Sequence record: MW021758.1
Strand: one strand, 5' to 3'
Length of the DNA: 64,000 nucleotides
Shown: piece by piece, positions 37,038 through 63,924 of the stretch
Layout of the letters: each line of letters starts with the position of its first letter
How positions within the stretch are numbered: the first letter of the stretch is position 1
Notes under the pieces: generated by a model
Told to the model about the DNA's origin: nothing
What the model saw: the letters and a program-made list of their open reading frames with translations, nothing else
Databases searched by the model: none
Program-made: the position numbers and the translations under genes

Positions 37038-39104
37038 TCACTGTTGAGCTCGTTGGCTCGAGGTGTAGATGAACTTGTACGGATCACTCAATCCATACTG
37101 GCCCATCTTACCTACCGGGGTATCGTACAGGTAGATGTTACCGTTACCGATAGACGCTAAGGTAAATGCACCATCGCGCTGAGTCAGTTTAGACGAGAAC
37201 ACCAACGTCATCGCCCGACCGTAACGACTCGTATCCGGGTGACCTGAAGTAATCAGTGCACCGTTCAATACATCGTTAATCGTACTTTGACCCACAGTCA
37301 ACGAGTAGTTGGCTGTTGCGGTATTTGTACCATAATCCAGGATAGGGCGACCGAAGCAGTTGGAGTAGACGTTCTTACAACGTGTACCGACTGTACCGGC
37401 GATAGCTAGCGTCGTTGAGCCCATGAATGGATCGATAGTACCATTCCACTCAAAGGTGTTACTTGACTCACTGAAGCGGGACTTGATGCCCAGACCAGGA
37501 GACTGACGATCCAGATCGTAGTAGGTTGCGTTACTGGCGTTAGCCGTGAACTTACAACCTTCAGTCTGAACAGTCGAACCGTAACCACTTAAACCGCGAC
37601 CCGCTGAGTTTTTAAACTCGCAGTTCACTGCGTAGAAGTTAGGAACTTTGTCAACACTGGTCGCTTCAACTACTACGCCGTTGATACTATCGACGATGAT
37701 CAGGTTCTCCAGGTAAACCTGTGAGTTACCTTTTACACTGATCACTGGGTTGGCTGAGATAACAACCAACTTATTATCCGGTGCACGATCATCCAACGTA
37801 TGGACGTAGACCTTCCCTTCTTCGAGGTAGTAGCTACCTTTAGTTGTGGCTGCAGCACTAATGGATGCTACGGCAGTCAACTGAGTAGCACGGCCAGACG
37901 TACCAGCTGCGATGTAGTCAGCAACACCGCCCACTTTATCAGTCAGGGTTGCAACGTATACATTGTCTTGCCCTGGTGACTTAGTCCACGCACTTACCTT
38001 ACATGCACCGCTCAGGGTGACCTTGTTCGTACCGGAAGTAACGATATCCAGTGAACGGTCTTCGATTGGTGCACTTGGGCCTTCTCCGCTCTTGAACGAA
38101 GAACCGTCTTTGATGACGATAGTCCGTGCCAGCGGGGTACGAGTGATCGCTGCGTTGAAGCTCTTGTACGGGGACTGTTCGGTACCCTGGCCGTTCAGGT
38201 CATTACCGTTTACAGAGTCGACGTAGTAGACAACACCAGAACGTGCCCGTTTAACTTTAATCGAATAGTTCGGATTGAAGTCTGGGCCGTTATCGTCGAA
38301 CGTCGCTTTGATCTGTGCCAGGTTCCCGATTGTTTCGAAGATCGGTGGTAACTGAGGAGAGATACGAAGCAACTTACCATTACGGTCGTAGCTAGTCTCA
38401 TCGCTCGGGCCAACAACTTCTAACAGGGAACCCTCACGGAAGCGAACCTTCACCGGACTCTGGGTAGGTAATGTCATTACTTCGTTGAACTTACCGTCAG
38501 CCCCCAGAGAAAGAGCCATGGCGCTCGTAGCCGGGAGATAATCGATAGCGTTACCGATGACAACCTTTTTGTCTACGCGTCGGTTAGAGCCAGAGATACG
38601 CAGAGTTTTGCCGTCACTGGAATACTCCGTACTTACGTTACGAATCCACTTACGAATGGATGCGGTGTCAGAGAAGTAAACCGTCAACTGACCTTTGATG
38701 ATAAGTGCGTTAGGCGCAGCACGAACCGTCACCATTGCCACAGTACTGCTCAGCAACACCGGAGTTACTGGTTCAACGATGATGTCGGTATCATCTAACT
38801 GAGTACCGTATTCTTCGTTGATACGTTTGATCAAGTCAGACGTAGTCAGAATATTACCTGCGGCAGTAAAGATGAGCGGTACGGAGAAGATACCCGAGAA
38901 CTCTACTTTGTTGTACTCGATAACCTTGGAGTCACGATAAGGCGAATCCTCCAAGGCGACCATGGTGACTTTCGTATCGTAGTCGGGGTGATCGTTAGCG
39001 GTTGGTCCGATGAAGTATACGTCATTAGGAGAAATGAACGTACCTTTGTCCTGGTTAATTACGCTAACTAACAGAACCTTACTTTGTTGGGAGTAATTAC
39101 TCAT
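37038..39104 (-). CDS. tail fibre/RBP with phiKZ-type virion N-terminal domain and beta-helix-like body
   Basis: N-terminus (LVSVIN..YDTKVTM..Y.K..L...IN..YG..L...DI) recalled as a phiKZ-type tail-protein domain; YYVDSVNGND..G....PYKS motif. Confidence 0.7.
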   Translation of the reverse strand: MSNYSQQSKVLLVSVINQDKGTFISPNDVYFIGPTANDHPDYDTKVTMVALEDSPYRDSKVIEYNKVEFSGIFSVPLIFTAAGNILTTSDLIKRINEEYGTQLDDTDIIVEPVTPVLLSSTVAMVTVRAAPNALIIKGQLTVYFSDTASIRKWIRNVSTEYSSDGKTLRISGSNRRVDKKVVIGNAIDYLPATSAMALSLGADGKFNEVMTLPTQSPVKVRFREGSLLEVVGPSDETSYDRNGKLLRISPQLPPIFETIGNLAQIKATFDDNGPDFNPNYSIKVKRARSGVVYYVDSVNGNDLNGQGTEQSPYKSFNAAITRTPLARTIVIKDGSSFKSGEGPSAPIEDRSLDIVTSGTNKVTLSGACKVSAWTKSPGQDNVYVATLTDKVGGVADYIAAGTSGRATQLTAVASISAAATTKGSYYLEEGKVYVHTLDDRAPDNKLVVISANPVISVKGNSQVYLENLIIVDSINGVVVEATSVDKVPNFYAVNCEFKNSAGRGLSGYGSTVQTEGCKFTANASNATYYDLDRQSPGLGIKSRFSESSNTFEWNGTIDPFMGSTTLAIAGTVGTRCKNVYSNCFGRPILDYGTNTATANYSLTVGQSTINDVLNGALITSGHPDTSRYGRAMTLVFSSKLTQRDGAFTLASIGNGNIYLYDTPVGKMGQYGLSDPYKFIYTSSQRAQQ

Positions 39105-39114
39105 ATTGGTTCAC

Positions 39115-41166
39115 TTACCCTTTCTTAGTGTAAATAAAACGATACGGCGTTTCGCGCTGGTAGCAGGGACGTGCACCTACTAACGTGTTGTGCAAGAACG
39201 CTTGACCTTTGCCTTTCGGATAGATAGACAAAGCGCTGCTGTCCATAGTGCAGCTCCAGTAATGTGCAACTGCTGCACGCACTGAGTTCAGGCCGTTAGT
39301 GTACGCGGCCGCATCTGGGTTATTCCACCGAGATTTAAACGTAGTCAAACTCAGGTTGAGCGAGTAGGTATTGTCACCGGTGTCCTGAACGAAGTTACCT
39401 TCGCAATCAGAATAGCTACCGCCAATACGCATGATAGTTACGTTACCGGAGATACCTGAACCTACGCCCTGACCAGTGCCGTCGAAACCGCACTGCTTAA
39501 CAACTGCGCCGATTTCAACAACCCAAGGTTTGATACCCATGGTTGGAGTTACGCGGTCTGAGTTATAACGGAAACCGCCGCGCTGACACCACTGAGCAGT
39601 ACAGCCCTGAGTAACAACGTTAGTACCCCAGCTGTTAAGGCCGGCATCAGTCCAGCTCCAGCCGAAGTCGCAGTTCTTAGCGTACAGATACCCGACTACT
39701 TTAGCCTGAGTGATTTCAGTCTGGAAGCCACGGTAAGTGTACTGGAACTGAAGGTTTTCCATGTAAACAGTAGACCCGTTCTCGGTACGACCAGAGTTAC
39801 TTGCCATGATACCCAGAACTTTGTCATCTGGTTGACGATCGTCAAACAAGTGAACGTAAGTACGACCAGACACGTTGTCGAAGTAATAGGTAGACTGGTT
39901 GATACGGCAGTCGTCCAGCGTCTTAGCAGCGGTCATACGGACTGGGCCAGCGGCCAGCGTTACGTTGTTCATGTCAACGAAGGCAGCCAAACGGATACGG
40001 TCGGTATACCACATGGACTCACTTTGCTGTTTCCAGGTGAGGTCGTTTACGGTCGCCGTGAAGATAGGCTTTTTAGGGCCGAAGCCGATGACGTCCAGAG
40101 AACGGTTATTAACTGAACTCGTCCAGCCGTTGTTGGCATCGTAATAAACATCCGTCCCTTTGACCATGATGATACGGGCAGCAGGTGTTGCCATCAATGC
40201 ACGGTTAAACGACTTGAATGCTTTACCCTCCGACTGACCATCATTCTGATCGTTACCTGCTACGTTATCAACGTAGTAAGTCAAACCAGAAGTTGCCTTG
40301 CGCTTACCTACGTCGTAGTCAGTGCTGTAGGTAATGTTCCCATTACTGTACGATTTGAGGATACGTACATCTTCGTGGATGTTGTCCATGAAGGAAGGGA
40401 GATCCGGCATGATATCCAGAAGAATACCGTTTTCATCGTAGCTTGTTTCGCCACGGTTACCAACGATCTCTTTCATCACGCCGTTATTGAAGTGCGCAAC
40501 CAACGTACCGTTTACCGGGTAGCTTTCGAAAGCACGGTATTGGCGGTCAGTATCGATGCTCACGGCTTTGATCCGGCTATTGAGAGTAATAGTCTGAATC
40601 GGGCCAGCGAATCGGATATCGGTATCAGGGAAGTTATAGCTGTTACCCATGAAGGTAACTGCGCCGAAGTCACGAGAGAACTGATAATGAGGACGTTCAA
40701 ACCAATCGGCTACCAGAGCGCTATCACCCAGATAGATGTCAGTCTTACCGATGTAACCGTAACTGTTCGGGTTAGCTTCGATCTGAACGTGACGAATACC
40801 AGTCGCTACATCGTCAGGACGATACGGGCCATCAACGATATCTGCAGCGGTCAGACCGAGGCGATACTTAGCGTTGATAGAAGGAAGTAAACCAGCCAGG
40901 CGAGAAGGTGCTTGGTTCTCTAAGGCGGCGTAAGGACGTTCCAGCAAATGGTTCAGATGGAGACGGGAATAATAAGTAGTTACCGGAATGTCATTGCTAT
41001 CACCTGCGTTAGGCGAAGCAGTAACTTCCGTATTCAGACCGTTCAACACGAAGTTGTTTACAACCGGCCCTGACAACGCGATAGTTTTATCGGTAAAGTT
41101 AGTTCCGTTAGCTTCATTGATGAGGTCAATCGCAATGAGTTTAGCGTCTTTGGTTAAGTCAACCAT
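39115..41166 (-). CDS. tail fibre/RBP, paralog of 37038..39104
   Basis: same N-terminal domain; shared ETSYDxNG.LL.I.P.LP and YYVDNVAGND motifs. Confidence 0.7.
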   Translation of the reverse strand: MVDLTKDAKLIAIDLINEANGTNFTDKTIALSGPVVNNFVLNGLNTEVTASPNAGDSNDIPVTTYYSRLHLNHLLERPYAALENQAPSRLAGLLPSINAKYRLGLTAADIVDGPYRPDDVATGIRHVQIEANPNSYGYIGKTDIYLGDSALVADWFERPHYQFSRDFGAVTFMGNSYNFPDTDIRFAGPIQTITLNSRIKAVSIDTDRQYRAFESYPVNGTLVAHFNNGVMKEIVGNRGETSYDENGILLDIMPDLPSFMDNIHEDVRILKSYSNGNITYSTDYDVGKRKATSGLTYYVDNVAGNDQNDGQSEGKAFKSFNRALMATPAARIIMVKGTDVYYDANNGWTSSVNNRSLDVIGFGPKKPIFTATVNDLTWKQQSESMWYTDRIRLAAFVDMNNVTLAAGPVRMTAAKTLDDCRINQSTYYFDNVSGRTYVHLFDDRQPDDKVLGIMASNSGRTENGSTVYMENLQFQYTYRGFQTEITQAKVVGYLYAKNCDFGWSWTDAGLNSWGTNVVTQGCTAQWCQRGGFRYNSDRVTPTMGIKPWVVEIGAVVKQCGFDGTGQGVGSGISGNVTIMRIGGSYSDCEGNFVQDTGDNTYSLNLSLTTFKSRWNNPDAAAYTNGLNSVRAAVAHYWSCTMDSSALSIYPKGKGQAFLHNTLVGARPCYQRETPYRFIYTKKG

Positions 41167-41306: not shown

Positions 41307-41627
41307 TCACTTGACGAAACGATTATAAACTGCACGAATATCATCTTCCGTGAAGAACATGTATATCGGCGTATCTTGTTCTACTTTGAACATGATCCGA
41401 TATTTGTCTTCGTAAAACTTACCGTAGACTTTAACGTAGCGGCCATCGACCACATCGGCGCCAGCGCCACCCGATAATCCCATCTCACGGTGCATTAAAG
41501 TACAAAGTGTATCAAAGTCGTAAGGGATGACTTTAATGTACACATGGTAGATTGCTGTCTCAAGATTACGCTGCCATCTTTCAAACAGCTTCGCCATCGC
41601 TTGGTCAGTAGTTTCCGGCTTTGTCAT
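41307..41627 (-). CDS. hypothetical protein
   Basis: ORF track. Confidence 0.65.
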   Translation of the reverse strand: MTKPETTDQAMAKLFERWQRNLETAIYHVYIKVIPYDFDTLCTLMHREMGLSGGAGADVVDGRYVKVYGKFYEDKYRIMFKVEQDTPIYMFFTEDDIRAVYNRFVK

Positions 41628-41838
41628 GGGCGTGTTCCATTTTAGTTGGTTTTACTTGCATACCAACCGCAACGATCAACGCGCCCATCCAGATAAAGAC
41701 CATAATAGCGCAGGCCACGTTACCGAAAATATACCAGGCACTAACCTGATGGAACGCGTCGTAGATACAGTAACCTACAACTGCCCAGCCGATTACCAAA
41801 ATGATTGCTGCAATGATGTAAAATGCTTTACGGGTCAT
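41605..41838 (-). CDS. two-TM membrane protein
   Basis: two hydrophobic helices. Confidence 0.7.
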   Translation of the reverse strand: MTRKAFYIIAAIILVIGWAVVGYCIYDAFHQVSAWYIFGNVACAIMVFIWMGALIVAVGMQVKPTKMEHAHDKAGNY

Positions 41839-41850
41839 CTTTTTGATTCC

Positions 41851-42012
41851 TCAATAAATAAGCTTTGTACGCCTTTCTAAGCGCGCAATTGTTTTAGATG
41901 ACATCTTGTCCATGTCATCCGGGTTGAGTGCAACAGAGTCCTTTATAGGCGCGCTTGGCGTTGCGTTTAACTTCTTACTTTCGATCCTTTTTATTCTACT
42001 CTTACTGGCCAT
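41851..42012 (-). CDS. 53-aa basic peptide
   Basis: manual translation MASKSRIKRIESKKLNATPSAPIKDSVALNPDDMDKMSSKTIARLERRTKLIY; GAGG RBS; stop abuts the next RBS. Confidence 0.6.
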   Translation of the reverse strand: MASKSRIKRIESKKLNATPSAPIKDSVALNPDDMDKMSSKTIARLERRTKLIY

Positions 42013-42042
42013 TAGGTACCTCTCAATAATGATGTCAGGTTC

Positions 42043-42080
42043 AATTCATAATGAGAATGTAATCTCATATCTTATGAATT
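42043..42080. promoter_or_regulatory. imperfect palindrome carrying divergent TATG elements
   Basis: AATTCATAA...TTATGAATT outer and TGAGA/TCTCA inner arms between divergent genes. Confidence 0.5.
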
Positions 42081-42114
42081 ACCCAAAATTAAAATTTCCA
42101 TTAAGGTCAGATCA

Positions 42115-42318
42115 ATGAATCAGTTAGTAGTAGAAACTGCACGTAAAATTGAAAACATTACTCCGTCCAAAACTAGCCGTGAACTTACGGTTCTCCATTT
42201 CGAAGGTGGCTCTAAAGAGTCATTTATGAAATGGTTCATGGAAAAACATCAGCCTAAGGTTGGTGACTTCTTGGTTAAGGATACCCAAGGTTTTACTCAG
42301 GTAGTCAATAGCCTCTAA
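42115..42318 (+). CDS. small hypothetical protein; only plus-strand gene
   Basis: AAGG RBS, followed by a hairpin; W..KH.P.VG..LV..DG motif recalled from small phage proteins. Confidence 0.6.
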   Translation: MNQLVVETARKIENITPSKTSRELTVLHFEGGSKESFMKWFMEKHQPKVGDFLVKDTQGFTQVVNSL

Positions 42319-42329
42319 GTCGACATAAA

Positions 42330-42353
42330 GGAGAGTAGCCGCGGCTACTCTCC
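42330..42353. terminator. hairpin between convergent genes
   Basis: ggagagtagcc-gc-ggctactctcc. Confidence 0.65.
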
Positions 42354-42361
42354 CTATGCTG

Positions 42362-42568
42362 TTACATCGGTACAAATTCTTCTTGTACCCAACCGAAAGG
42401 TACAACATGAGACAACACGCCTTTCAGCTGTTCCTCATGCGTCAAGTCTTCCCATGGAGGTGTGCGGTCGCTGAGCAATTCAATCGCTTCCAGCGCCAGT
42501 GGCAGATTCTCGTCAGGCACTAAAGAAAGCGCCTCATGGATAGACTCAACAAAAATAGAACGTCCCAT
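42362..42568 (-). CDS. hypothetical protein
   Basis: ORF track. Confidence 0.6.
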   Translation of the reverse strand: MGRSIFVESIHEALSLVPDENLPLALEAIELLSDRTPPWEDLTHEEQLKGVLSHVVPFGWVQEEFVPM

Positions 42569-42632
42569 AGTCTATTAGCTCCCTAAGCTACAACGGATAT
42601 AATGTCCATAGTAACCAAGGGAGCGTAAGACT

Positions 42633-43214
42633 TTAGAACACGGTGATCATATCGTTCTTAGCGTCGTAGCGTGCGTTTACCATGGTAACGTCACCATCGG
42701 TTTTGTACACGTTAATGACCCAGGTGTATTTGCCTGGTTTGCTGTCGAACTCAGCGTGATCGCATTTAACGCCTTCCAGGAAGAATGACTCAGTTTGTTC
42801 GTTGATGATTTCACAAGTGCGGGTTGCAATTGCTTCGTCTTCGTTAGGCTCAGTGGCCAGGCCCAGAACCATCAATACTGCCAGAACACCGACAACATAA
42901 CCGATGATGCCTTTGAAGTTATGGAAGCCGCCGTTACGGGTACGGATAACACGAACGATACCCCAGCCGATAGGAGAGAGCAGCATATTCAGCCAGACGG
43001 TAGTTGGTTTGTAACCGGCAGCTTTTACTTCTTCGTTATCGCAATGCGCCAGGTTAACGTTGACGACCATGAGAACAACCCAAGCGATCAGGTTGACGGT
43101 ATCGTTTTCGGATATGCCAACGATGGTTGCGAAGACAGCGAAGGCTGCAACGGTGTAGTAGAAGAAGCGGTTAGAAACAGTTTTGTTGTTTGGAGTATTG
43201 ATGATAGTAGACAT
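42633..43214 (-). CDS. multi-TM membrane protein with C-terminal periplasmic domain
   Basis: four hydrophobic segments, then a Cys pair. Confidence 0.7.
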   Translation of the reverse strand: MSTIINTPNNKTVSNRFFYYTVAAFAVFATIVGISENDTVNLIAWVVLMVVNVNLAHCDNEEVKAAGYKPTTVWLNMLLSPIGWGIVRVIRTRNGGFHNFKGIIGYVVGVLAVLMVLGLATEPNEDEAIATRTCEIINEQTESFFLEGVKCDHAEFDSKPGKYTWVINVYKTDGDVTMVNARYDAKNDMITVF

Positions 43215-43269
43215 TTTTAATTCCTTGTTAATTGAGTTTGGTTTAGAGAGTTTAACTGGTTATTAACGA

Positions 43270-43626
43270 TTAATCTTCGCGAACTTTAACGCCCACAAAA
43301 CCTGTGACTGTTCCGGCTGCCGTTTTTCGCGATAAGGCCTTTTCTTCTTCCTCTTTGACTAAAGCGTCAAAGTTAGCTTTGTCGTCAATCTTTACCCGAT
43401 ACTCTTCATCAGACAAGCTTTCTGCTTCGTAGAGGTAAGATTTAACGAAACGCTCCAAGTAGGTATCTGGTTCAACTGTACTAAGTTGGAGCTTGAGTTC
43501 TTCGATACGTTCGGCTCGCGTATGCGGATACGGGAGTTTGGTGCCAGCTTCCCGTTGGGCCTCTAATACTACTGGATGGTGTTTGGAACTGTAATAAGCT
43601 TGCGAATGACGGATATTGTTGCTCAT
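43270..43626 (-). CDS. KLPYPHTR-motif protein A
   Basis: start moved to MSNNI (AGGAG RBS); paralog of 43661..43915. Confidence 0.7.
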   Translation of the reverse strand: MSNNIRHSQAYYSSKHHPVVLEAQREAGTKLPYPHTRAERIEELKLQLSTVEPDTYLERFVKSYLYEAESLSDEEYRVKIDDKANFDALVKEEEEKALSRKTAAGTVTGFVGVKVRED

Positions 43627-43660
43627 GGTATTCTCCTGAAAGGTTTTAGGAATTGGTTTA

Positions 43661-43915
43661 TTAATGCGAGAGGTATTTGTGTTCGTACTCGATCCTGCTC
43701 TGGTACTGCTCATCGGTAATCGCCAATAAATCGAATATTTTACAACCGATGAACTGCCTCAGAGTATAATCGTTCCCAGCTTCATCTGCCATAGCTCGAA
43801 GTTCATGGTATCGCTCTATACGAGTATGGGGGTAAGGAAGTTTGGTTTTTATTTTACCGGGTGCTTCCCAGATAGTCGTTTTCTGATTAGGTCTGGGATG
43901 GTTTTTAAGATCCAT
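43661..43915 (-). CDS. KLPYPHTR-motif protein B
   Basis: AGGAG RBS; shares KLPYPHTR.ER..EL...DE.Y. Confidence 0.7.
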   Translation of the reverse strand: MDLKNHPRPNQKTTIWEAPGKIKTKLPYPHTRIERYHELRAMADEAGNDYTLRQFIGCKIFDLLAITDEQYQSRIEYEHKYLSH

Positions 43916-43923
43916 GACATCTC

Positions 43924-44127
43924 CTATTTGGATTCTGTCAGTTTACGATAAGTGCACTGGAAGCAAATCTCGTTACCGGTCAAAGGCACAGTGGCGAGAC
44001 GGTCGTGAACCTCGCCACAATGGGCGCAGTTACATTTAATTGTGCGACTGATATCAATGCCGCGTTTAAGATAAGTATTAGCCAGCATGTTGTAGGCGTC
44101 GTTAAATGACATAGCTTGAGTTTGCAA
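43924..44127 (-). CDS. small zinc-finger-like protein
   Basis: CAHC...CFQC; AAGGAG RBS before TTG. Confidence 0.6.
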   Translation of the reverse strand: MQTQAMSFNDAYNMLANTYLKRGIDISRTIKCNCAHCGEVHDRLATVPLTGNEICFQCTYRKLTESK

Positions 44128-57128: not shown

Positions 57129-57158
57129 GGACGTGAGCCTCATGGTATTGTGTAAATA

Positions 57159-57200
57159 TTCATAGGAACCCAAAATAAAAGAGGAGGGTTTCCCCTCCTC
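57159..57200 (-). promoter_or_regulatory. terminator + late promoter module (repeat copy B2)
   Basis: ttcataggaac-ccaaaataaaa-gaggagggtttcccctcctc; 20 nt identical to 53250..53269. Confidence 0.7.
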
Positions 57201-57205: not shown

Positions 57206-59218
57206 TTAGGAAACGATGGAGACTGCGCGCCAGGTACCAGGGCTACCTGCTGTAACGCATCGCCAGTGAGTAACTCCGCCTGCAGTGGGTGCAGTATTCC
57301 AACACAAATCACCTACTCTGAATGATCCAGTAGTCGGGGCACTTGTACCAACTACCTGTTTGAACGTAGGTGTTACCCAACGGACTCCGTTACTTGTTTG
57401 AGTAAACGTACCAAGGACTTTGTTATTACCCCACATCCCACCACCGGAACCATAGTTAGCATCCCCAGTTATATAACATCCATCCATGAACACATTAGTC
57501 GTATCGTCGGCAATAGTTACATTGGCACCGAAATAGCAACTTCTGATAGTCATCCGAAGATCAGCTCCGGCATGGGTCGTTGTGAAGTCACCGACGAAAG
57601 TACATTTATCAAACCAGATATCTGAGTTAGGGTACGCCAACGTAACTGGTTGAGAAAAGTTACAGTACTCGAACTTAGTGAAACGTTTACGAGCCAGACC
57701 TGGGATAGAGTAGAAACTTATCCCGTGGAATTCGGCGCGGCTAGTCACGTCGTTTAGCATCGTGTACACAATACCTGGGGAGCACCGTACATCGCGAAGA
57801 TATAGCTCCCCGTAGTTGTGTTGGATCCCCTGGTATTCGGCAATACCACCGCCATTGATTTTAGTTACACCCTGTTGCATCTTAAGGAAGTAAGGTGTAG
57901 GTGCACCTTTGATGTCCCAGTTAGCGTTAAACTCAACATGGCAGTTATTGATGTAGTTCTCGATACCCCAGTTAAGATCCATCACTGGGCAAACGTGGTT
58001 GTCTTCAAATTGACAGTCGTTAAAACGAAGGTAGTTACAGAAGTCATTGGATATAGTACTGACTGCAACGATAGGCGACTCTACCGTTTTAGTCATGTCG
58101 AAGGTATCGACGTTAGAGGTACGATCTCCCGACGTACGACCGCAATCCCATACGTTAAAGAAGTTGAAATCGCTATCCTGACTTTTATCGAGATAAAGAC
58201 CAGCTCCGTTGAAACGCTCTACGTTAACGTAGCTGAACAGAGACTGATATTGGTATTGAAGGTATATACCGCGGCAAGTACTCATGTTACCTAACAGCTG
58301 AATATTACTTATTTCAATCCCAGCGAAACCTGCCTCCATGGCATTGGTAGTGGGGTTACGGCCTGGGAAGTGAAGAGCTCCGTAGGTTTCGTAACCTGGC
58401 CCGATCTGAACGGAGATTGTAGTTGAGTCTTTGACGCCACAACCGCGAAGTTTAATCCCACAGTTAGTCTGGAATACGATCGGGGTACGAATTACAATTG
58501 GGTTAGCGTTACTTCCCTGAGGAAGCATCAGTATCTTTTTACGGGATGCATCGGCCGCTTTCTTCAGTGCAATGGCGTTATCTGCCTGAGAATAATGCAC
58601 ACCCCACCACTCGGCATGGTTGGTAGATGTATCAACGATAACGCGTTTCCAACGGGCTCCTCCCGGAGTAACTGCCACTGTACCGGAGTTATCTGCTGCA
58701 TTTTTATCCGATACGTCATGGAAGAATTCTCCGCCGCCGTAGTTAGCGCCTTCTCGATATCCGCTGAGTAAAACTCGCTGGCCAGGGAAGGTAGGTTCTG
58801 TTGCTCGTAACTCATCGAATGATTTGATCTGACCAATCAATCCGAACCCGACACTAGAACGTATTTGTTCAAGATGTTTAACAAGTTCTTTGGTTGGTTC
58901 CCTGAGCGGATTCCCTGACATATCGAGAACCGGGGATGCAATCCCACCCATGTTCACGTAACGGTAAACGAACTCTTTCGAGTCATCAACGAATACGTAA
59001 AACTGTTGATCTTTAACGGTTGCTGCAATAGCTGCGTTCAAGTCAGAGAATGCGTTACCGTAATCCATCAGCTTACGCAATTCGCTGACAGTGATACGTT
59101 GAGTCTCTAACTTATCTGCTCCCGTTATACGAGATGCCGCGAAGATATCGCTATCGTTAATCCCAGTCCCGGTAGGTTCGGGTAACTGAGATATTTTAAC
59201 TGGTGATTTATCGGCCAT
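57206..59218 (-). CDS. tailspike/putative depolymerase with KISQLP anchor
   Basis: anchor + head + beta-helix; C-terminal GD..WN..P..GG...WRCVTAG.PGTW. Confidence 0.8.
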   Translation of the reverse strand: MADKSPVKISQLPEPTGTGINDSDIFAASRITGADKLETQRITVSELRKLMDYGNAFSDLNAAIAATVKDQQFYVFVDDSKEFVYRYVNMGGIASPVLDMSGNPLREPTKELVKHLEQIRSSVGFGLIGQIKSFDELRATEPTFPGQRVLLSGYREGANYGGGEFFHDVSDKNAADNSGTVAVTPGGARWKRVIVDTSTNHAEWWGVHYSQADNAIALKKAADASRKKILMLPQGSNANPIVIRTPIVFQTNCGIKLRGCGVKDSTTISVQIGPGYETYGALHFPGRNPTTNAMEAGFAGIEISNIQLLGNMSTCRGIYLQYQYQSLFSYVNVERFNGAGLYLDKSQDSDFNFFNVWDCGRTSGDRTSNVDTFDMTKTVESPIVAVSTISNDFCNYLRFNDCQFEDNHVCPVMDLNWGIENYINNCHVEFNANWDIKGAPTPYFLKMQQGVTKINGGGIAEYQGIQHNYGELYLRDVRCSPGIVYTMLNDVTSRAEFHGISFYSIPGLARKRFTKFEYCNFSQPVTLAYPNSDIWFDKCTFVGDFTTTHAGADLRMTIRSCYFGANVTIADDTTNVFMDGCYITGDANYGSGGGMWGNNKVLGTFTQTSNGVRWVTPTFKQVVGTSAPTTGSFRVGDLCWNTAPTAGGVTHWRCVTAGSPGTWRAVSIVS

Positions 59219-59293: not shown

Positions 59294-61426
59294 CTAGATG
59301 ATATTGTTCTGGGTAATAGTAGACCCTTGACCAACCTGTACTTTACCCGTAGTACCCGCTCCAAGACGACTATTGGCGATTAATACGTTTACGTTATTAG
59401 CATCGGATGTAATATCGTAAAGTGGTTTATTCGCATTAGCCGAAGACGATACTCCGCTGAGGATACTGTTACGTACACCCAGTAACCGGATCGGATAAAA
59501 TGCAGATGGAGTTTTAACTCCCGCATCATTGATGTTGAACTTGATATTACTTTCAACAACGCCGTTCAATGTCATACCGTGTTCAGGGACGTTCACCAAC
59601 TTAACATCTAAGTTAGAGTAACGACAGCCAACTGCTTCCAGCGCGTCCTGTGCAGGCGACTCAACGTAGAGGTCTAAGTCCATGTTGTTACAGTTAGAGA
59701 AAGTACAGCCGCGGCGTTGAGCATTGATCAAACGGATACTGCCCGTAATCCGATTACTGTCGGTAATAACCACCCCGTTGAGTGTCTTGGTCGTGGAGAC
59801 ATTATCCGCCACCAAATCAACTTTACCCGAGGAAGACGTAATCGTAATAGCGGAGCCAGCGGCATCTGTAACACGACCGGTCATTTGGAAGTTGGTGCAG
59901 TTGGTAATCTCAATCGTGGTTACGTTACCGGTGCTCTGGGTAAGGATAACGTTATCCAACAGAACCGGTTGGTAAAGATCACGAATACCTATCACGGTGC
60001 GAAGCGTATTTACAAATACGTTTCCGATAGCCTTGATACCTTTAATCAAATCACCTGCTGCGATGAAGTCTGGGTTAACCGTACCGAAACCAAAACCGCC
60101 ATAACAGTTAATGAAATAGTTGTTGAGGTAAGTACCGTTACTAGCTTCGTCAGCGTTCTTGGTATCTTCAGCGTTATTCGCAATACCCGCGCCTTTCTTA
60201 CCATTACCGATATTGATGAAGCGACAGCTTTTGATCAAGGTATCACGACCTTTGTTGACGATACCGTCTCCGTAGAAGGTTCCGTCTCGGTGAGCTACCT
60301 GGGCGCTATTGACAACATCACATTCAACAAACTCATTACGGAGACAACCGCCGCGTACAGTAACCGAGTCTTCACCTGCGTTAATGAAAGTACAGCGGAT
60401 AAACTGGTTATCGGTGGAGTTATTCTGCAGCCCCAAGTTATCGAACTTACCGTTCTTGAATGTCACGTTAGTAAAGACGCAATTCGTCCAGTTGTCTAAC
60501 GTGTTCTCGCCAAACTCAAAGCCTAATGCACCCGTAGTATCGACATAGTTGACGTCAATAGTCAGGTCTTTAAAGATAGCTCCAGTTACGGCAGTACTTC
60601 CGTTTGCGCGGTCGTTATCAACGCCAGCGGCTGTAGTCGGAGAAGAGATAAACGGAATTCGGTTACCTGTCCCTCTGAATACGATAGAAGCACCGTTACC
60701 AATCCAGCCGGCTTTAGAATAATGTTTTACCGGGGATGAGTAATAATAGGTTTTACCTGGGGAGAGGGTAATAGGGCCTACTTGTGCTTTCTGAGATGCA
60801 CGCATTGCTTCAGTATCGTCTACTTGACCGCCACCGAAATCTTCGAGCGTAAAGGCAGTCTTGTTCCGCTTCCAATAAAAGCCATCACCTGAGGCAGTAG
60901 TACCGCCATCATCGTTAGCTGTCCCTGCGTACCCCACAAATTCCCCGGATCCCAAAGAGCTACCAGAGAAATACCCAGCCAGGATAACACGTTGGCCTGT
61001 GTAGGTAGGTTTGATAGAACGCAGCGCGGAGAAATTGTCAACCTTACCAATGATATCGTAACCGGACGTCTCAGAGATAGCAGTTACGTTCAGCATGGAA
61101 AGATAAGTAGGGAAGCGGCGTTGTTTGCCATCGGAACCAATGACGGGCGATGCCTGGTTACGAACTCTCATGTACTGAAGAACGGAGAACTTAGCCGCGG
61201 TGTCGTAAACAAAGAACATCTCGTTATCGTCTACGGAAGCTAAACCTTCGGCGATAGTGTTAGCTGCGTTACTGAAGTAGACACCCTCACGAATATCGTA
61301 GAGAGAAGCTACGCTAGTTTGATCCAACTTAGTGTCGTTGGTATTGATGATAAACTGATCGTTCTCCATAACTTCCTTTTTAGGTAAGTCGGAGATCTTA
61401 GTAAATTTCATTGGGGAGACTGGCAT
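59294..61426 (-). CDS. tailspike/putative depolymerase with KISDLP anchor
   Basis: anchor + head + pectate-lyase-like beta-helix; start set at MPVSP. Confidence 0.8.
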   Translation of the reverse strand: MPVSPMKFTKISDLPKKEVMENDQFIINTNDTKLDQTSVASLYDIREGVYFSNAANTIAEGLASVDDNEMFFVYDTAAKFSVLQYMRVRNQASPVIGSDGKQRRFPTYLSMLNVTAISETSGYDIIGKVDNFSALRSIKPTYTGQRVILAGYFSGSSLGSGEFVGYAGTANDDGGTTASGDGFYWKRNKTAFTLEDFGGGQVDDTEAMRASQKAQVGPITLSPGKTYYYSSPVKHYSKAGWIGNGASIVFRGTGNRIPFISSPTTAAGVDNDRANGSTAVTGAIFKDLTIDVNYVDTTGALGFEFGENTLDNWTNCVFTNVTFKNGKFDNLGLQNNSTDNQFIRCTFINAGEDSVTVRGGCLRNEFVECDVVNSAQVAHRDGTFYGDGIVNKGRDTLIKSCRFINIGNGKKGAGIANNAEDTKNADEASNGTYLNNYFINCYGGFGFGTVNPDFIAAGDLIKGIKAIGNVFVNTLRTVIGIRDLYQPVLLDNVILTQSTGNVTTIEITNCTNFQMTGRVTDAAGSAITITSSSGKVDLVADNVSTTKTLNGVVITDSNRITGSIRLINAQRRGCTFSNCNNMDLDLYVESPAQDALEAVGCRYSNLDVKLVNVPEHGMTLNGVVESNIKFNINDAGVKTPSAFYPIRLLGVRNSILSGVSSSANANKPLYDITSDANNVNVLIANSRLGAGTTGKVQVGQGSTITQNNII

Positions 61427-61453
61427 GTCATGGCCCTTTTCCAATTGAGTTAT

Positions 61454-61464: not shown

Positions 61465-61465
61465 G

Positions 61466-61500
61466 ACAAACATAGGCCAGGGAAACCCCTGGCCGTATGA
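61466..61500. repeat. 35-nt direct repeat copy A2 (terminator hairpin)
   Basis: identical to 59259..59293. Confidence 0.9.
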
Positions 61501-61503
61501 TCG

Positions 61504-63924
61504 TTAAATGTTAGGCATCTCAAAACATTCTAGTGTAACAACTGCGTTAGTCAACGTCACTGTAGCAGCAGTCGTGTTAACAAATCGAATCGTTACTTCC
61601 CCATCCTTGGTGCAATCGCACTGAATCATTACACCATTACGATTGACCGAACACCAAACTTTACCGACGGCCCAGGTACCTTTAACTTTTGAATCTTGTG
61701 CCACGATCACCGCAGTCCCGTTGGCCGGTACCGATTGAGTAAACGTATTAGACTTGACGTAATACGGAGTGAACTCAACAGCGGCCTTTTTACCAGTTTC
61801 ATCGATAACTACGTAAGTACTCGCTCCTCCCTCTGGGGCAACTAAGGAAATGCGATCGCCCTTTTTGTAGTTAACCAGGGAAGATAAAGTCGAGTCGTAC
61901 ATGTAGTCGTTGTTACCAAACTCAGCCCTACTCAACCCTAAGGACCTGATAGAGTCAGCACCGATGGTAAAGTTACATACCGAAGGGGCCTTGGTAATAT
62001 AAATATTATCTCGGAACATGGAATGACCGTAAGGTAGCCCGGAAGTGACGAACGCCAGAACACCGTACGTACTCGCTGTATCGATGTTGTTGTTAGTGAA
62101 GATCATATTCTTAGTTGCTGACATCCGAATATGACCCATATTGGTATCCTTCACTAAGTTGTTACTGAAGGTCACCGATTCAGATAATTTTATCCATACC
62201 GAGTTAGCGCCTGGGGAAGTAAACGGAGATCCGATAAATTGGTTAGCGTTAATTAACGCGTTCCCGGAGGCCATGATAGCTACTCTACCATTGACTACTG
62301 TATTCCCAGTTACAGTACCGGTACCGATGTCTAACGATGGGAAATCGCCATTAGTCTTGTAGCCGGCATTCTCAATTACGTTACCTGTTACACTAACATA
62401 ATCTACCGTAATGCCACGGTTTGAACGGAACCCGATACCAACCTCGCCAATATCCTTTAGGATGTTGCCACTTACTGAGAAACGTAATACTGGGTTAAGT
62501 GCAGGGTTATTGAATGGCGTGGTATCAATAACTAAACCGAATCGCGTGACGCCAGTAATGATGTTACCTTGGATAACCGCGCTGGTTAAGTTATTGAACG
62601 CTATACCATAGCTCAAATTACGACAGGTATTACGAGAAACGACTAATCCGTCCATCGTGGTACTAGATCCGCCGGCACCGTTAATATTTTCGTCATTAAG
62701 AGTTATACCACCGCCGCGTTGACCGACAGCGGCAACTGGATCGATCAGACCATCATAAACGAAGTTATCTACTATCTGACCATCGTGGCACTCGATGTTA
62801 CCCGTCTTCATTAAAATCCCATCTCCGTGATGGTGGAAGACGTGGTTACCTCTGACAATAAAGTTACGGCTGCTACGGATGGCAATACCTTCTTCGCCTA
62901 ATTCGTGCGTTTTGTTGTTTTCAATCAGGACTCGGTCGGAGTTACTTACCGAGATAGCGTCGGTTTGTAACGAGATATCGTTGTCCCGAATAGTCAAGTC
63001 TTTTACCCGAGTCAACTGGATAGCAGTTGCGCCCTTACTCCACATAGTAGCCGGTTTATCGACAGCCCTGCTGATAATCAACCCTTGAATAAGAAGTGAC
63101 TCTAAGTCTGATCCGGTGAATAATATCAGAGTAAGGTCTTGGGAGTCAATAAAGATTTCCCCTGGACCGATGATGGATGTAAAGCTTGTCAACTCAAAAG
63201 ACTTATTTACCCTGTAGTTTCTAGTCAACTTAACAATGATGTTATTATCACTTTTTCCGTTGAGCTTACAAAACGCCAAAGCATTGTCTATCGAGTCATT
63301 ATCTACATTTACGCCATCACCGACTGCGCCGAACATCTCTAAGTTTATTTCATTACCTAACAGACGTTTCCATGAGTAATTACCATTACTGACAGATGCG
63401 ACCGTACCACCGTCATCGACTGAGTAGGTTAGCGAGGATATAAATGCACCCCCGCCTAAATGGCTACCGGAATGAAATCCGTTGAGGTAAACTACCTGAC
63501 CCTCTTTAGTAGGTACTAAATTACGCAATGAATCGTAGGAGTCTACTCGTCCAACAACTCCGAAACCAAACGGGCCGCCTAGGTCACCTATAGTCTTAAG
63601 TGCGATACCCGTGCCCTCTATAATCTGTTTCCCGTCTTCACCAACAACAGGACTGGCGACGTCGTTTATTTTCAAATACCGAGCAACTGTTAACTTATCT
63701 GCATCGTTATAGACGTAGAAAGAGTCGCCGTTATTAGTAATATCTAATCCTTCTTCGATACTGTTGAATGCGTCATTGAACAATATTGCAGAACGAATAT
63801 TGGTAATATCAGCCTGTCTGGTAATCGGCAAACCTCGCGTGGTTGTATTATTCAGCGGGATAGCATCACTTTCCCGTACAACAGTAGCCTTACCGAGCTC
63901 AGATATTTTAACCTGATCAACCAT
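61504..63924 (-). CDS. tailspike/putative depolymerase with KISEL anchor
   Basis: anchor + head + right-handed beta-helix (I.GN...N repeats). Confidence 0.8.
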   Translation of the reverse strand: MVDQVKISELGKATVVRESDAIPLNNTTTRGLPITRQADITNIRSAILFNDAFNSIEEGLDITNNGDSFYVYNDADKLTVARYLKINDVASPVVGEDGKQIIEGTGIALKTIGDLGGPFGFGVVGRVDSYDSLRNLVPTKEGQVVYLNGFHSGSHLGGGAFISSLTYSVDDGGTVASVSNGNYSWKRLLGNEINLEMFGAVGDGVNVDNDSIDNALAFCKLNGKSDNNIIVKLTRNYRVNKSFELTSFTSIIGPGEIFIDSQDLTLILFTGSDLESLLIQGLIISRAVDKPATMWSKGATAIQLTRVKDLTIRDNDISLQTDAISVSNSDRVLIENNKTHELGEEGIAIRSSRNFIVRGNHVFHHHGDGILMKTGNIECHDGQIVDNFVYDGLIDPVAAVGQRGGGITLNDENINGAGGSSTTMDGLVVSRNTCRNLSYGIAFNNLTSAVIQGNIITGVTRFGLVIDTTPFNNPALNPVLRFSVSGNILKDIGEVGIGFRSNRGITVDYVSVTGNVIENAGYKTNGDFPSLDIGTGTVTGNTVVNGRVAIMASGNALINANQFIGSPFTSPGANSVWIKLSESVTFSNNLVKDTNMGHIRMSATKNMIFTNNNIDTASTYGVLAFVTSGLPYGHSMFRDNIYITKAPSVCNFTIGADSIRSLGLSRAEFGNNDYMYDSTLSSLVNYKKGDRISLVAPEGGASTYVVIDETGKKAAVEFTPYYVKSNTFTQSVPANGTAVIVAQDSKVKGTWAVGKVWCSVNRNGVMIQCDCTKDGEVTIRFVNTTAATVTLTNAVVTLECFEMPNI

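What the first reader, a model, noticed from the sequence alone, without database searches (positions are those of the whole stretch)
37038..63924. Ten-gene receptor-binding arsenal with three attachment architectures in a phiKZ-like phage
Seen: two genes have a phiKZ-type virion N-terminal domain (37038, 39115). Seven share an N-terminal anchor of about 110 aa, (K/R)I(S/T)xL...NA(F/Y)...F.V(Y/F)...Y...A..V (46214, 48804, 51006, 53274, 57206, 59294, 61504). One has no anchor (44318). Together they carry about 11 beta-helix-type modules, and a terminator at the window edge suggests the array continues. Established: branched multi-depolymerase systems are known in RaK2/K64-1-type and CBA120-type phages. 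Inference: a distinct hyper-branched adsorption apparatus in which many spikes dock via a common anchor to a shared scaffold, implying a broad capsule/O-antigen range.
Basis: partly seen in the sequence, partly recalled or inferred. Interest (0 to 1): 0.7.

Follow-up and report, generated by a model that had tools for sequence, protein, structure and literature searches.

The report
Multi-spike host-binding gene array, Serratia jumbo phage
A giant phiKZ-like Serratia phage carries about fourteen sugar-degrading tail-spike genes, ten sharing one N-terminal attachment domain; this is real but is the Serratia counterpart of the multi-spike system already published for Klebsiella phage phiKp24.

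Summary
The window is the last 64 kb of Serratia phage vB_SmaM_Yaphecito (Moabitevirus, Chimalliviridae). All ten genes lie on the minus strand.

- **gp311 and gp312:** they start with the first ~150 residues of DUF7941, which I identify as the phiKZ gp127 family (baseplate outer periphery), followed by a beta-helix glycosidase.
- **Seven genes (gp323-gp329):** they share a ~110-aa N-terminal anchor, directly followed by a beta-helix "cap".
- **gp322:** it starts at the cap, with no anchor.
- **gp326:**

The array does continue. gp1, across the record ends, is an eighth anchored gene. gp224 and gp225, 8 kb before the window, make ten. With the unrelated fibre gene gp48, that is about 14 receptor-binding candidates.

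The locus is syntenic with, and homologous to, the published "hyperbranched tail fibre" cluster of Klebsiella phage phiKp24 (14 fibres, 11 with shown depolymerase activity).

The anchor has no curated Pfam family among those checked and no PDB fold match. It occurs in 132 protein clusters, almost always at the extreme N-terminus. Where it docks is unknown.

Relatives differ by cassette swaps, some just after the anchor or cap and others taking most or all of the gene.

Verdict: a new member of a known kind, of moderate interest.

The parts
37038..39104 (-). gp311, 688 aa. N-terminal half of a phiKZ gp127-like domain (DUF7941, residues 1-147), followed by a spike body that is a paralogue of gp312.
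   Evidence: Pfam DUF7941 E 2e-19. phrog_30606 matches full length, with tail fibre and hydrolase PHROGs over residues 269-601. 27% identical to gp312 over the full length.
39115..41166 (-). gp312, 683 aa. gp127-like N-terminal domain plus a right-handed beta-helix glycosidase-like body.
   Evidence: Pfam DUF7941 E 1e-18. AF2 model pLDDT 76, mostly >=90 per 10-residue block over residues ~280-560, with a repeating strand pattern. Foldseek matches beta-helix glycoside hydrolases (5mqp E 9e-7, XylC 3vst) and phage tailspikes. The N-domain matches phiKZ 9xqd_0 with target-normalised TM 0.54 and probability 1.0.
41307..44127 (.). Nine small ORFs (gp313-gp321, 53-193 aa; one on the plus strand) between the DUF7941 spikes and the rest of the array. 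Function unknown.
   Evidence: Annotated as hypothetical. No PHROG hit. A block of small ORFs sits at the same place in phiKp24, Moabite and Totoro.
44318..46135 (-). gp322, 605 aa. An anchorless spike that begins directly with the beta-helix cap.
   Evidence: Cap HMM residues 1-128, E 2e-27. Aligns to gp1 residues 110-556. Only a 78-nt gap lies upstream, so there is no split anchor. Cap-bearing spikes without an anchor also occur in phiKp24 and in contig L012.
46214..48715 (-). gp323, 833 aa (the longest ORF runs to 48763). Anchor at 48374-48715, then cap and spike body. The whole gene is replaced in phage Moabite.
   Evidence: Anchor HMM E 9e-43. Cap at residues 118-239. Block 46176-48740 has no DNA match in Moabite.
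48804..50993 (-). gp324, 729 aa. Anchor at 50649-50993, then cap and spike body. Probably co-transcribed with gp325 (12-nt gap, no hairpin or motif).
   Evidence: Anchor HMM E 4e-41. Cap at residues 107-231. phrog_27731 matches full length. Upstream sequence.
51006..53201 (-). gp325, 731 aa. Anchor at 52851-53201, then cap and spike body.
   Evidence: Anchor HMM E 3e-44. Cap at residues 114-231. EPS-depolymerase and tail-spike PHROGs.
53274..57173 (-). gp326, 1299-aa ORF (likely start 57128, giving 1284 aa). Anchor at 56781-57128, then two spike modules in tandem, each with its own cap. The part after the second cap is swapped in Moabite and ParM-25.
   Evidence: Anchor HMM E 3e-41. Caps at residues 122-252 and 704-808. 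Two PDB matches to the start of spike beta-helices, at 135-210 and 706-781. PHROG families hit in two stretches. Block 53268-55008 is replaced in relatives. Five homologous clusters also have two caps.
57206..59218 (-). gp327, 670 aa. Anchor at 58862-59218, then cap and spike body. Everything after about residue 97 is swapped in Moabite.
   Evidence: Anchor HMM E 3e-41. The cap matches CBA120 TSP2, WceF and Klebsiella depolymerases in PDB. Block 57217-58927 is replaced. AF2 anchor model pLDDT 77.
59294..61426 (-). gp328, 710 aa (the longest ORF runs to 61444). Anchor at 61076-61426, then cap and spike body.
   Evidence: Anchor HMM E 2e-41. Cap at residues 123-244. phrog_24409.
61504..63924 (-). 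gp329, 806 aa. Anchor at 63580-63924, cap, then beta-helix. Replaced from about residue 35 onward in ParM-25 and Totoro.
   Evidence: Pfam Beta_helix E 1e-19, NosD and GH28. PDB depolymerase 7lzj E 6e-13. Block 61427-63820 is replaced.
63971..63996 (-). GC-rich hairpin (11-bp stem) in the 76-nt spacer between gp1 (outside the window) and gp329. The motif TCCTATGA follows at 63955-63962. It is one of seven such hairpin-plus-motif units that frame the spike genes.

Best explanation
The region is most of the receptor-binding gene set of a Chimalliviridae (phiKZ-like) jumbo phage of Serratia. It is homologous to the 'hyperbranched tail fibre' set of Klebsiella phage phiKp24.

**Spike build.** Each gene encodes a tail spike made of an N-terminal attachment module and one or two right-handed beta-helix modules. 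The beta-helix modules are of the kind that bind and cleave surface polysaccharide (capsule, O-antigen or exopolysaccharide).

**Three attachment modes in the window.**
1. gp311 and gp312 carry the N-terminal half of a phiKZ gp127-like baseplate-periphery protein. They are probably built into the outer baseplate platform, together with the free gp127-like proteins gp57 (full length) and gp2 (188 aa, adjacent to the array).
2. Seven window genes, plus gp1, gp224 and gp225 elsewhere in the genome, carry a clade-specific ~110-aa anchor, followed by a short helix and then the beta-helix cap.
3. gp322 starts at the cap and has no anchor.

**Inferred docking.** I infer that each paralogous anchor fixes its spike to its own site on a conserved, non-variable part of the tail apparatus. 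Every virion would then display many different enzymes at once.

**Expression and variation.** Most genes form their own hairpin-plus-promoter-like unit. Relatives differ by swaps: of everything downstream of the anchor or cap (gp327, gp326), of all but the first ~35 residues (gp329), or of the whole gene (gp323). This changes the enzyme set without disturbing attachment.

**Shown versus inferred.** Shown: the domain anatomy, the homologies, the synteny and the mosaic blocks. Inferred: presence in virions, enzymatic activity, and one site per anchor (that last step about 40% likely).
For: **Identity and family.** The window is 100% identical to MW021758.1. Both genera are in Chimalliviridae.

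**Spike nature.**
- Pfam Beta_helix hits for gp329 and tail spike/EPS depolymerase PHROGs.
- PDB sequence matches of the caps to CBA120 TSP2, WceF and Klebsiella depolymerases.
- The gp312 model matches beta-helix glycosidases and tailspikes.

**The gp127 link.**
- Pfam DUF7941 hits: gp57 E 8e-81; gp311 and gp312.
- PDB 9xqd_0 PHIKZ127: E 0.0044 with gp57 alone and 5e-6 with a profile.
- Structural match to the same chain, target-normalised TM 0.54.
- In phiKZ, gp127 sits in the baseplate's outer 'star lobe' (PMC13250141).

**The anchor as an independent N-terminal module.**
- Ten paralogues per genome.
- 132 clusters among 1.84 billion representatives, nearly all starting at residues 1-9.
- It is combined with cap-type and other C-terminal modules.
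- Orthologous anchors are 91-100% identical among most Moabitevirus phages (66% in Totoro), whereas paralogues are 21-47% identical.

**Homology with phiKp24.** The anchor occurs in 7 genes of the syntenic phiKp24 locus. The phiKp24 fibres form a large structure around the baseplate, and 11 of 14 are active depolymerases (PMC9700779; 10.1101/2025.09.09.675204).

**Swaps.** DNA blocks 46176-48740, 53268-55008, 57217-58927 and 61427-63820 are replaced in relatives, while the flanks stay 92-99.7% identical.

**Anchors do not co-vary with neighbours.** Their sequence does not change when the variable bodies of neighbouring spikes are swapped. This argues for docking on conserved parts.

**Expression units.** Hairpins plus the motif TYCTATGA: 6 of the 7 matches in the whole 64-kb window lie just upstream (about 10-50 nt) of the likely array start codons.
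Against: - No virion proteomics, micrographs or enzyme data for any Moabitevirus phage were found in the searchable literature.
- The docking partner is unidentified. No protein has detectable internal repeats, and no ten-member partner family exists.
- The anchor model is a monomer of moderate confidence (pLDDT 77; the first 40 residues about 60). It has no solved structural relative, so its role as an attachment domain rests on position, conservation and analogy.
- In ParM-25 and Totoro the gene at the gp329 position has an anchor only 33% identical to gp329's. This fits one-site-per-anchor only loosely, although it still groups with gp329 in the tree.
- gp311 and gp312 have no sequence match in PDB.
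- The gp127-like N-domain of the gp312 model has low confidence over residues 32-66.
Confidence: 0.65

Rival explanations
1. Hetero-oligomeric anchor bundles. The paralogous anchors bind each other and do not dock separately on a scaffold. [quoted passage not shown]
For: The phiKZ atlas reports twelve attachment sites, each holding six gp131-like N-domains from four paralogues plus a six-helix bundle (PMC13250141). Yaphecito belongs to the same family. Each anchor model ends in a helix at residues 110-118. No repeated scaffold or matching partner family was found.
Against: No detectable sequence or fold similarity between the anchor and any phiKZ chain in PDB. Array size varies among relatives (four anchored genes in Totoro's main array, six in L011), which a fixed-stoichiometry bundle tolerates less easily.
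Confidence: 0.25
2. Hierarchical branching, as modelled for phiKp24. One or two primary fibres attach to the baseplate and carry T4 gp10-like docking domains, to which secondary and tertiary spikes bind through their N-termini.
For: This is the published model for the homologous phiKp24 set, based on HHpred hits to T4 gp10-like folds in gp306 and gp301 (PMC9700779). In the wider family, 8 clusters have 120-200 extra residues between anchor and cap. There is a weak partial BFVD similarity of the anchor to a protein named for the TSP1/Gp66 N-terminal domain (E 5e-3, 70 columns).
Against: In Yaphecito every anchored protein goes from anchor to cap within residues 105-123, so none has room for an inserted branch domain. 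The phiKp24 'primary' gp306 and 'secondary' gp301 carry the same anchor as the 'tertiary' ones, which the length-based hierarchy did not take into account. No Pfam Tail_spike_N or gp10-like family hit was found, and no PDB fold match to CBA120 or G7C spikes.
Confidence: 0.15
3. Alternative occupancy. All anchors compete for the same few sites, so individual virions carry different random subsets of spikes.
For: There is one shared domain family. Array size varies between relatives without visible change in the other loci compared.
Against: Paralogous anchors are as diverged within a genome (mean 29%) as between genera (mean 30%), while orthologues are mostly 91-100% identical within the genus. 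That pattern suggests specialised interfaces, not equivalent ones.
Confidence: 0.12
4. Some of the proteins, above all the anchorless gp322, are not virion parts. They would be free enzymes released at lysis that strip polysaccharide around the plaque.
For: gp322 lacks both N-terminal attachment domains. Soluble phage depolymerases are known (general knowledge, not checked here).
Against: An anchorless spike is conserved at the same place in phiKp24, where the paper counts it among the fibres. gp322 sits inside the structural array with the same hairpin-plus-motif unit.
Confidence: 0.15

Closest known systems
Hyperbranched tail-fibre system of Klebsiella jumbo phage phiKp24 (vB_KpM_FBKp24, Maaswegvirus, Chimalliviridae); Ouyang et al. 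2022, PMC9700779
   Same: - The locus plan is the same: two DUF7941 spikes, small ORFs, an anchorless spike, a run of spikes with the same N-terminal anchor (7 in the phiKp24 locus), a 188-203-aa DUF7941 protein, the prohead protease and vRNAP.
- The total is about 14 candidate fibres in both.
- gp312 is 41% and gp2 is 70% identical to their phiKp24 counterparts.
   Different: - Host: Serratia (one relative was isolated on Pectobacterium) versus Klebsiella.
- Anchors are only 18-40% identical between the genera, and the spike bodies are mostly unrelated.
- No Yaphecito protein has an insertion between anchor and cap.
- One Yaphecito spike, gp326, has two modules in tandem.
- The paper did not describe the shared anchor or the gp127 link. 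It ranked fibres by N-terminal length.
phiKZ baseplate outer periphery: gp127 and the gp131-paralogue fibre base (PMC13250141; PDB 9xqd)
   Same: - Same virus family.
- gp57, gp2 and the N-termini of gp311 and gp312 belong to the gp127 family.
- The principle is shared: paralogous N-terminal domains fix different distal domains to the baseplate periphery.
   Different: - phiKZ has twelve fibres ending in beta-propellers. It has no beta-helix spikes and no gp127-spike fusions.
- The ~110-aa anchor shows no detectable relation to gp131-type N-domains.
Branched tailspike complexes of CBA120 (TSP1-4) and G7C (gp63.1/gp66)
   Same: - The logic is the same: a conserved N-terminal attachment part and a variable beta-helix enzyme.
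- The caps match the start of the CBA120 TSP2 beta-helix in sequence (5w6p, E 4e-10).
   Different: - No Tail_spike_N or T4 gp10-like domain was detected.
- The anchor model has no PDB match.
- There is only a weak partial BFVD hit to a TSP1/Gp66-N-named protein.
- Four spikes there, about fourteen here.
RaK2 / phiK64-1 type multi-depolymerase jumbo phages of Klebsiella
   Same: Many depolymerase-like spikes encoded in one jumbo myophage. One PDB fold hit of gp312 is a K64-1 depolymerase (9k4a, E 2.6e-3).
   Different: The phage lineage is unrelated. The anchor is absent from them: tblastn finds it only in Moabitevirus and phiKp24-like phages among 50,697 phage records.

Membership tests
phiKp24-type hyperbranched tail-fibre system | Syntenic locus: DUF7941 spikes, small ORFs, anchorless spike, run of spikes, small DUF7941 protein, prohead protease, vRNAP | tested here: met
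   Gene order in L003 (phiKp24) versus the window plus L002. The same plan appears in metagenomic contigs L011 and L012.
phiKp24-type hyperbranched tail-fibre system | Homologous fibre proteins (shared N-terminal domains) | tested here: met
   The anchor HMM hits 7 phiKp24 proteins with E 6e-21 to 8e-32, and the DUF7941 HMM hits 3. tblastn gives E 2e-11. Foldseek BFVD matches phiKp24 fibres at E 4e-10.
phiKp24-type hyperbranched tail-fibre system | Ten or more beta-helix depolymerase-like fibres per genome | tested here: met
   There are 13 spike-type genes (gp311, gp312, gp322-329, gp1, gp224, gp225) plus the fibre gene gp48. The beta-helix was modelled only for gp312; for the others it is inferred from cap and family matches.
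phiKp24-type hyperbranched tail-fibre system | Primary fibres with long N-terminal parts holding T4 gp10-like docking domains (the paper's model) | tested here: inconclusive
   No anchored Yaphecito protein has extra residues between anchor and cap, and no gp10-like family hit was found. HHpred-grade profile comparison against T4 gp10 could not be run.
phiKp24-type hyperbranched tail-fibre system | Bushy fibre mass at the baseplate by EM; enzymatic activity on polysaccharide | not testable with these tools
   No micrographs, proteomics or enzyme data for Moabitevirus were found in the papers searched.
phiKZ gp127 family (Pfam DUF7941) | Significant match to the family profile | tested here: met
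   gp311 70.6 bits and gp312 68.3 bits against a cut-off of 27, N-terminal half of the profile only. gp57 matches the full profile at E 8e-81, and gp2 at E 2.5e-11.
phiKZ gp127 family (Pfam DUF7941) | Homology to phiKZ gp127 itself | tested here: met
   gp57 versus PDB 9xqd_0 PHIKZ127: E 0.0044, running to the C-terminus of both proteins. Profile A5: E 5.1e-6 over 68-277 / 70-290. The gp312 model against 9xqd_0: probability 1.0, target-normalised TM 0.54, 165 columns.
phiKZ gp127 family (Pfam DUF7941) | Location in the baseplate outer periphery | not testable with these tools
   Known for phiKZ only (PMC13250141).
CBA120/G7C-type branched tailspikes (TSP1/Gp66 N-terminal domain docking on T4 gp10-like domains) | TSP1/Gp66-type N-terminal domain in the attaching spikes | tested here: not met
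   No Pfam hit even at E up to 10 for the seven anchors. No PDB fold match at E <= 0.1. Only weak partial BFVD similarity (E 5e-3, query-normalised TM 0.35).
RaK2/K64-1-type multi-depolymerase system | Homologous attachment domains | tested here: not met
   tblastn with the anchor finds 23 records, all Moabitevirus or phiKp24-like.
Right-handed parallel beta-helix tailspikes/depolymerases | Beta-helix fold or family match in the body of the protein | tested here: met
   Pfam Beta_helix, NosD and GH28 for gp329. PF27114 Phage_tail_beta is on record for gp327 and its relatives. PDB matches of the caps. gp312 model and its fold matches. Catalytic residues were not examined.

The most novel reading that the evidence does not exclude
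The ~110-aa anchor may be a previously undescribed attachment module of one Chimalliviridae clade. In this reading, up to ten diverged paralogous anchors per genome fix different spikes to a phiKZ-type 'star-lobe' platform that includes gp127-like proteins (gp2, gp57, and the N-termini of gp311 and gp312). They would do so either one per site or as mixed bundles. That would be a mode of multi-spike assembly different from the T4 gp10/TSP-type branching assumed so far, including for phiKp24.
Probability: 0.3. Interest if true: 0.6.

Novelty: new member of a known kind. Interest (0 to 1): 0.35.

Why it matters
**What it extends.** The phiKp24-type multi-spike apparatus is not a Klebsiella curiosity. 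It is a conserved trait of a Chimalliviridae clade that also infects Serratia, with one close relative isolated on Pectobacterium. The same locus plan appears in uncultured contigs of 82 and 264 kb.

**Handles for the open structural question.** How a phiKZ-type baseplate carries more than ten different spikes is unresolved. Three points here bear on it:
- a sharply delimited anchor domain with no curated Pfam family among those checked and no solved relative;
- the identification of DUF7941 as the phiKZ gp127 family, which ties two spikes and two small conserved proteins to a baseplate position now known at near-atomic level;
- mapped swap boundaries that show which parts are structural and which are exchangeable.

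**Annotation.** It explains the inconsistent product names in public records, such as 'exopolysaccharide biosynthesis protein', 'head binding protein', 'neck protein' and 'amylovoran biosynthesis protein'.

Tried and rejected
**Searches that gave nothing.**
- **PDB sequence searches:** gp311, gp312, gp322 and gp48 gave no relevant match (none for the first three, two chance-level hits for gp48).
- **Anchor fold search against PDB:** no match (best E 0.17, TM about 0.2).
- **Pfam scan of the seven anchors at E up to 10:** chance hits only.
- **First word-index protein search with the anchor:** only 5 close relatives. The full HMMER scan was needed.
- **Nine small ORFs between gp312 and gp322:** no PHROG hit.
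- **Pfam scan of P0130 and P0131** (proteins carrying partial or repeated anchor motifs): no family.

**Looking for a docking scaffold.** Self-BLAST of all 84 ORFs of 350 aa or more found no internal repeats. All-against-all BLAST found no other large paralogue family: only a 3-member family and a few pairs.

**Hits rejected.**
- P0111, a 1657-aa repetitive protein with 12 partial matches, is a spurious hit.
- The sigma-70 promoter scan gave fewer sites than the shuffles and was ignored.

**Ideas considered and set aside.**
- That DUF7941 equals the gp131-type fibre N-domain of phiKZ. The only phiKZ chain hit is gp127.
- That gp322 is a split gene whose anchor lies upstream. The upstream gap is only 78 nt.

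Full report
**Source.** The window is identical to positions 211555-275554, the last 64 kb, of Serratia phage vB_SmaM_Yaphecito (MW021758.1, 275,554 bp).
- The genus Moabitevirus is now placed in Chimalliviridae, the phiKZ-like nucleus-forming family. So is Maaswegvirus, the genus of Klebsiella phage phiKp24.
- The record annotates virion and non-virion multisubunit RNA polymerase genes and a tubulin-like gene. gp226 matches Pfam phiKZ_IP, an internal-head-protein family.
- A published tree groups the shell and tubulin proteins of phiKp24 with those of Moabitevirus phage 2050HW.
- 'phiKZ-like' is therefore correct.

**Observation.** All ten ORFs are present at the stated coordinates, all on the minus strand.
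- gp311 and gp312 match Pfam DUF7941 over residues 1-147.
- The seven named genes share an N-terminal domain. Alignment A2 has 12 invariant columns among the seven. An HMM built from it scores each at E 1e-41 to 1e-44 over about 110 residues.
- Similarity continues to about residue 190-230. That second stretch is a separate module, which I call the cap.
- The cap matches the first turns of the beta-helix in solved spikes and relatives: CBA120 TSP2, Pantoea WceF and Klebsiella depolymerases. It also tracks the newer Pfam family PF27114 'Phage_tail_beta', which the precomputed tables list.
- gp322 begins at the cap.
- gp326 has two caps, at 122-252 and 704-808.
- The hairpin at the window edge is real.

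**Beyond the window.**
- The record is opened exactly at the stop codon of gp1. gp1 is a 738-aa gene with the same anchor, and in Moabite it is contiguous with the gp329 orthologue.
- Next to gp1 lies gp2, a 188-aa DUF7941 protein.
- Two more anchored genes, gp224 and gp225, lie about 8 kb before the window.
- gp48 is an unrelated fibre-type protein.
- The genome thus has ten anchored genes and about fourteen receptor-binding candidates.
- DUF7941 has four members: gp311, gp312, gp2 and gp57.

**What DUF7941 is.**
- gp57 covers the whole Pfam profile (E 8e-81). It matches chain 0 of PDB 9xqd, PHIKZ127, as far as the C-terminal residues of both proteins (E 0.0044).
- A profile of gp57 relatives raises the match to E 5e-6.
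- The AlphaFold2 model of gp312 has mean pLDDT 76, mostly >=90 per 10-residue block over residues ~280-560. It matches right-handed beta-helix glycoside hydrolases and phage tailspikes. Its N-terminal domain matches 9xqd_0 with probability 1.0 and a TM-score of 0.54 normalised to the target.
- In the phiKZ structural atlas, gp127 is a component of each 'star lobe' of the baseplate's outer periphery.
- gp311 and gp312 therefore look like baseplate-periphery proteins whose C-terminal half has been replaced by an enzyme-like beta-helix.
- gp2 is 70% identical to its phiKp24 counterpart, the highest value in that syntenic block. The others are 38-62%, and the prohead protease is 61%.

**The anchor.**
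- tblastn finds it only in Moabitevirus and phiKp24-like Klebsiella jumbo phages among 50,697 phage records, at 4-8 places per genome.
- A full HMMER scan of 1.84 billion representatives finds 132 clusters. In nearly all of them the match starts at residues 1-9 of a 570-1350-aa protein.
- The anchor is joined to cap-type spikes. It is also joined to proteins without a cap, one of which carries a Peptidase_S74 domain.
- No family in the Pfam copy used matches it, and anchor-bearing, cap-less P0060 has no precomputed Pfam hit either.
- The model has pLDDT 77: about 60 for residues 1-40 and 81-88 for residues 41-119. It shows a small alpha/beta unit followed by a helix at 110-118.
- It has no match among solved structures.
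- In BFVD it matches its own family. More weakly, over 50-78 columns, it matches N-termini of other phage spikes, one of them named for the TSP1/Gp66 N-terminal domain.
- Within a genome the anchors are 21-47% identical. That is as diverged as between the two genera (18-40%). Orthologues are 91-100% identical among most Moabitevirus phages (66% in Totoro).
- A neighbour-joining tree shows some cross-genus groupings, but not clean one-to-one orthology.

**Relation to the known system.**
- The phiKp24 locus has the same plan. It holds seven genes with the anchor and three with DUF7941.
- That set was published as 'hyperbranched tail fibers', with fourteen predicted depolymerase fibres and a near-spherical fibre mass seen by cryo-ET. 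The attachment model was derived in silico from N-terminal length and HHpred hits to T4 gp10-like folds.
- A later preprint reports activity for 11 of the 14, covering 13 capsule types.
- The paper's 'primary' gp306 and 'secondary' gp301 carry the same anchor as its third-tier fibres. The model does not use that point.
- In Yaphecito no anchored protein has extra sequence between anchor and cap. In the wider family eight clusters do.
- Two uncultured contigs (264 kb and 82 kb) show the same plan, with six and five anchored genes next to a 188-aa DUF7941 gene.

**Variation among relatives.** Against Moabite, ParM-25 and Totoro, the array consists of conserved stretches (92-99.7% DNA identity for the first two) interrupted by four replaced blocks:

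| Block (window coordinates) | What is replaced | Replaced in |
|---|---|---|
| 46176-48740 | the whole of gp323 | Moabite |
| 53268-55008 | the part of gp326 after its second cap | Moabite, ParM-25 |
| 57217-58927 | gp327 after about residue 97 | Moabite |
| 61427-63820 | gp329 after about residue 35 | ParM-25, Totoro |

- The anchors of the other genes stay unchanged when neighbouring spike bodies are swapped. This argues against docking on variable spike bodies.
- Totoro has a reduced main array of four anchored genes. One is a two-cap chimera of a gp327-like N-terminal part and most of a gp324-like gene. A short remnant ORF stands in place of the gp323 and gp322 counterparts.
- Fusion between paralogues is therefore a likely origin of two-module spikes such as gp326.

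**Expression signals.**
- Upstream of gp322, gp323, gp325, gp326, gp327, gp328 and gp329 there is a GC-rich hairpin, followed 5-15 nt later by T(C/T)CTATGA. gp327 has a one-base variant.
- Six of the seven exact matches in the whole window, on both strands, lie just upstream (about 10-50 nt) of the likely array start codons.
- gp324 and gp311 follow their upstream genes after 12 and 10 nt, without such a unit.
- I read these as terminator plus late-promoter-like units. The resemblance to phiKZ late promoters is from memory and was not checked.

**Mechanism and its limits.**
- The best-supported reading is a virion-borne set of many different polysaccharide-degrading spikes. Each is fixed by a conserved N-terminal module and is exchangeable downstream of it.
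- Presence in virions and enzyme activity are inferred from homology with phiKp24. No such data for Moabitevirus were found.
- Where the anchor docks is open. I found no internally repeated protein and no partner family of matching size.
- One site per anchor on the conserved platform, mixed anchor bundles as in the phiKZ gp131 paralogues, hierarchical branching, and competition for shared sites all remain possible. I rank them in that order.

**Novelty.**
- The arsenal is annotated piecemeal in public records, and its Klebsiella homologue is published. This is a new member of a known kind.
- I did not find three points in the papers read: the delimitation of the anchor family, the DUF7941-gp127 link, and the cassette and fusion pattern.

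Noticed in passing
window 46167-46174, 48747-48754, 53233-53240, 57160-57167, 61455-61462, 63955-63962 (minus strand), with hairpins at 48768-48795, 53249-53270, 57180-57201, 59268-59287, 61475-61494, 63971-63996: Most spike genes (all but gp324 and gp311) are preceded by a GC-rich hairpin and, 5-15 nt later, by the motif TYCTATGA. Six of the seven matches in the 64-kb window are at these places. The hairpins before gp327 and gp328 are identical 20-mers. They look like terminator plus late-promoter units, and could also serve as recombination points.
   Followed up: partly
window 53274-57173 (gp326): One spike has two beta-helix modules in tandem behind a single anchor. Five other clusters in the family show the same two-cap build. 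The promoter-like motif lies inside the first 15 codons of the longest ORF, so the real start is probably 57128 (1284 aa).
   Followed up: partly
L010 (Serratia phage Totoro) about 25600-36240: The main array is reduced to four anchored genes. One is a two-cap chimera of two paralogues, and a short remnant ORF stands where two Yaphecito genes would be. This shows that paralogue recombination reshapes the array.
   Followed up: partly
L009 (Pectobacterium phage vB_ParM-25) 25240-29328: An intact 1362-aa ORF, the gp326 counterpart, has no CDS in the public record, so this is an annotation gap. Within the compared array, this phage, isolated on Pectobacterium, differs from Yaphecito in only two replaced blocks. 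One is shared with Moabite and the other with Totoro.
   Followed up: partly
L002 2323-2889 (gp2, outside the window): This 188-aa DUF7941 protein next to the array is 70% identical to its phiKp24 counterpart, the most conserved protein of the syntenic block. It is found beside the array in all seven loci examined, and is a candidate platform or adaptor protein.
   Followed up: partly
proteins P0130 and P0131: P0130 (950 aa) carries four matches (E<=1e-3) to the second half of the anchor, spaced about 60-190 residues apart. P0131 has the two halves of the anchor separated by a coiled-coil-like insert. The anchor may be built from two older sub-motifs.
   Followed up: partly
window 41307-44127: Nine small ORFs (53-193 aa) lie between the two spike groups. 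None matches any PHROG, and a comparable block is present in phiKp24.
   Followed up: partly
L004 22607-26199 (gp47 and gp48, outside the window): A pair of paralogous virion proteins. gp48 (742 aa) matches many 'virion structural/tail fibre' PHROGs through its first ~250 residues. It may be the phiKZ-style fibre of this phage, but it has no PDB sequence match.
   Followed up: partly
public records of the ten genes: Product names disagree between records for the same proteins: tail fiber, head binding protein, exopolysaccharide or amylovoran biosynthesis protein, pectin lyase, neck protein, bifunctional tail protein.
   Followed up: no
window 1-37000: The rest of the window holds mostly small hypothetical genes, plus thymidine kinase, dihydrofolate reductase, PhoH-like, AAA ATPase and PLxRFG-domain genes according to the record. 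I did not examine it.
   Followed up: no
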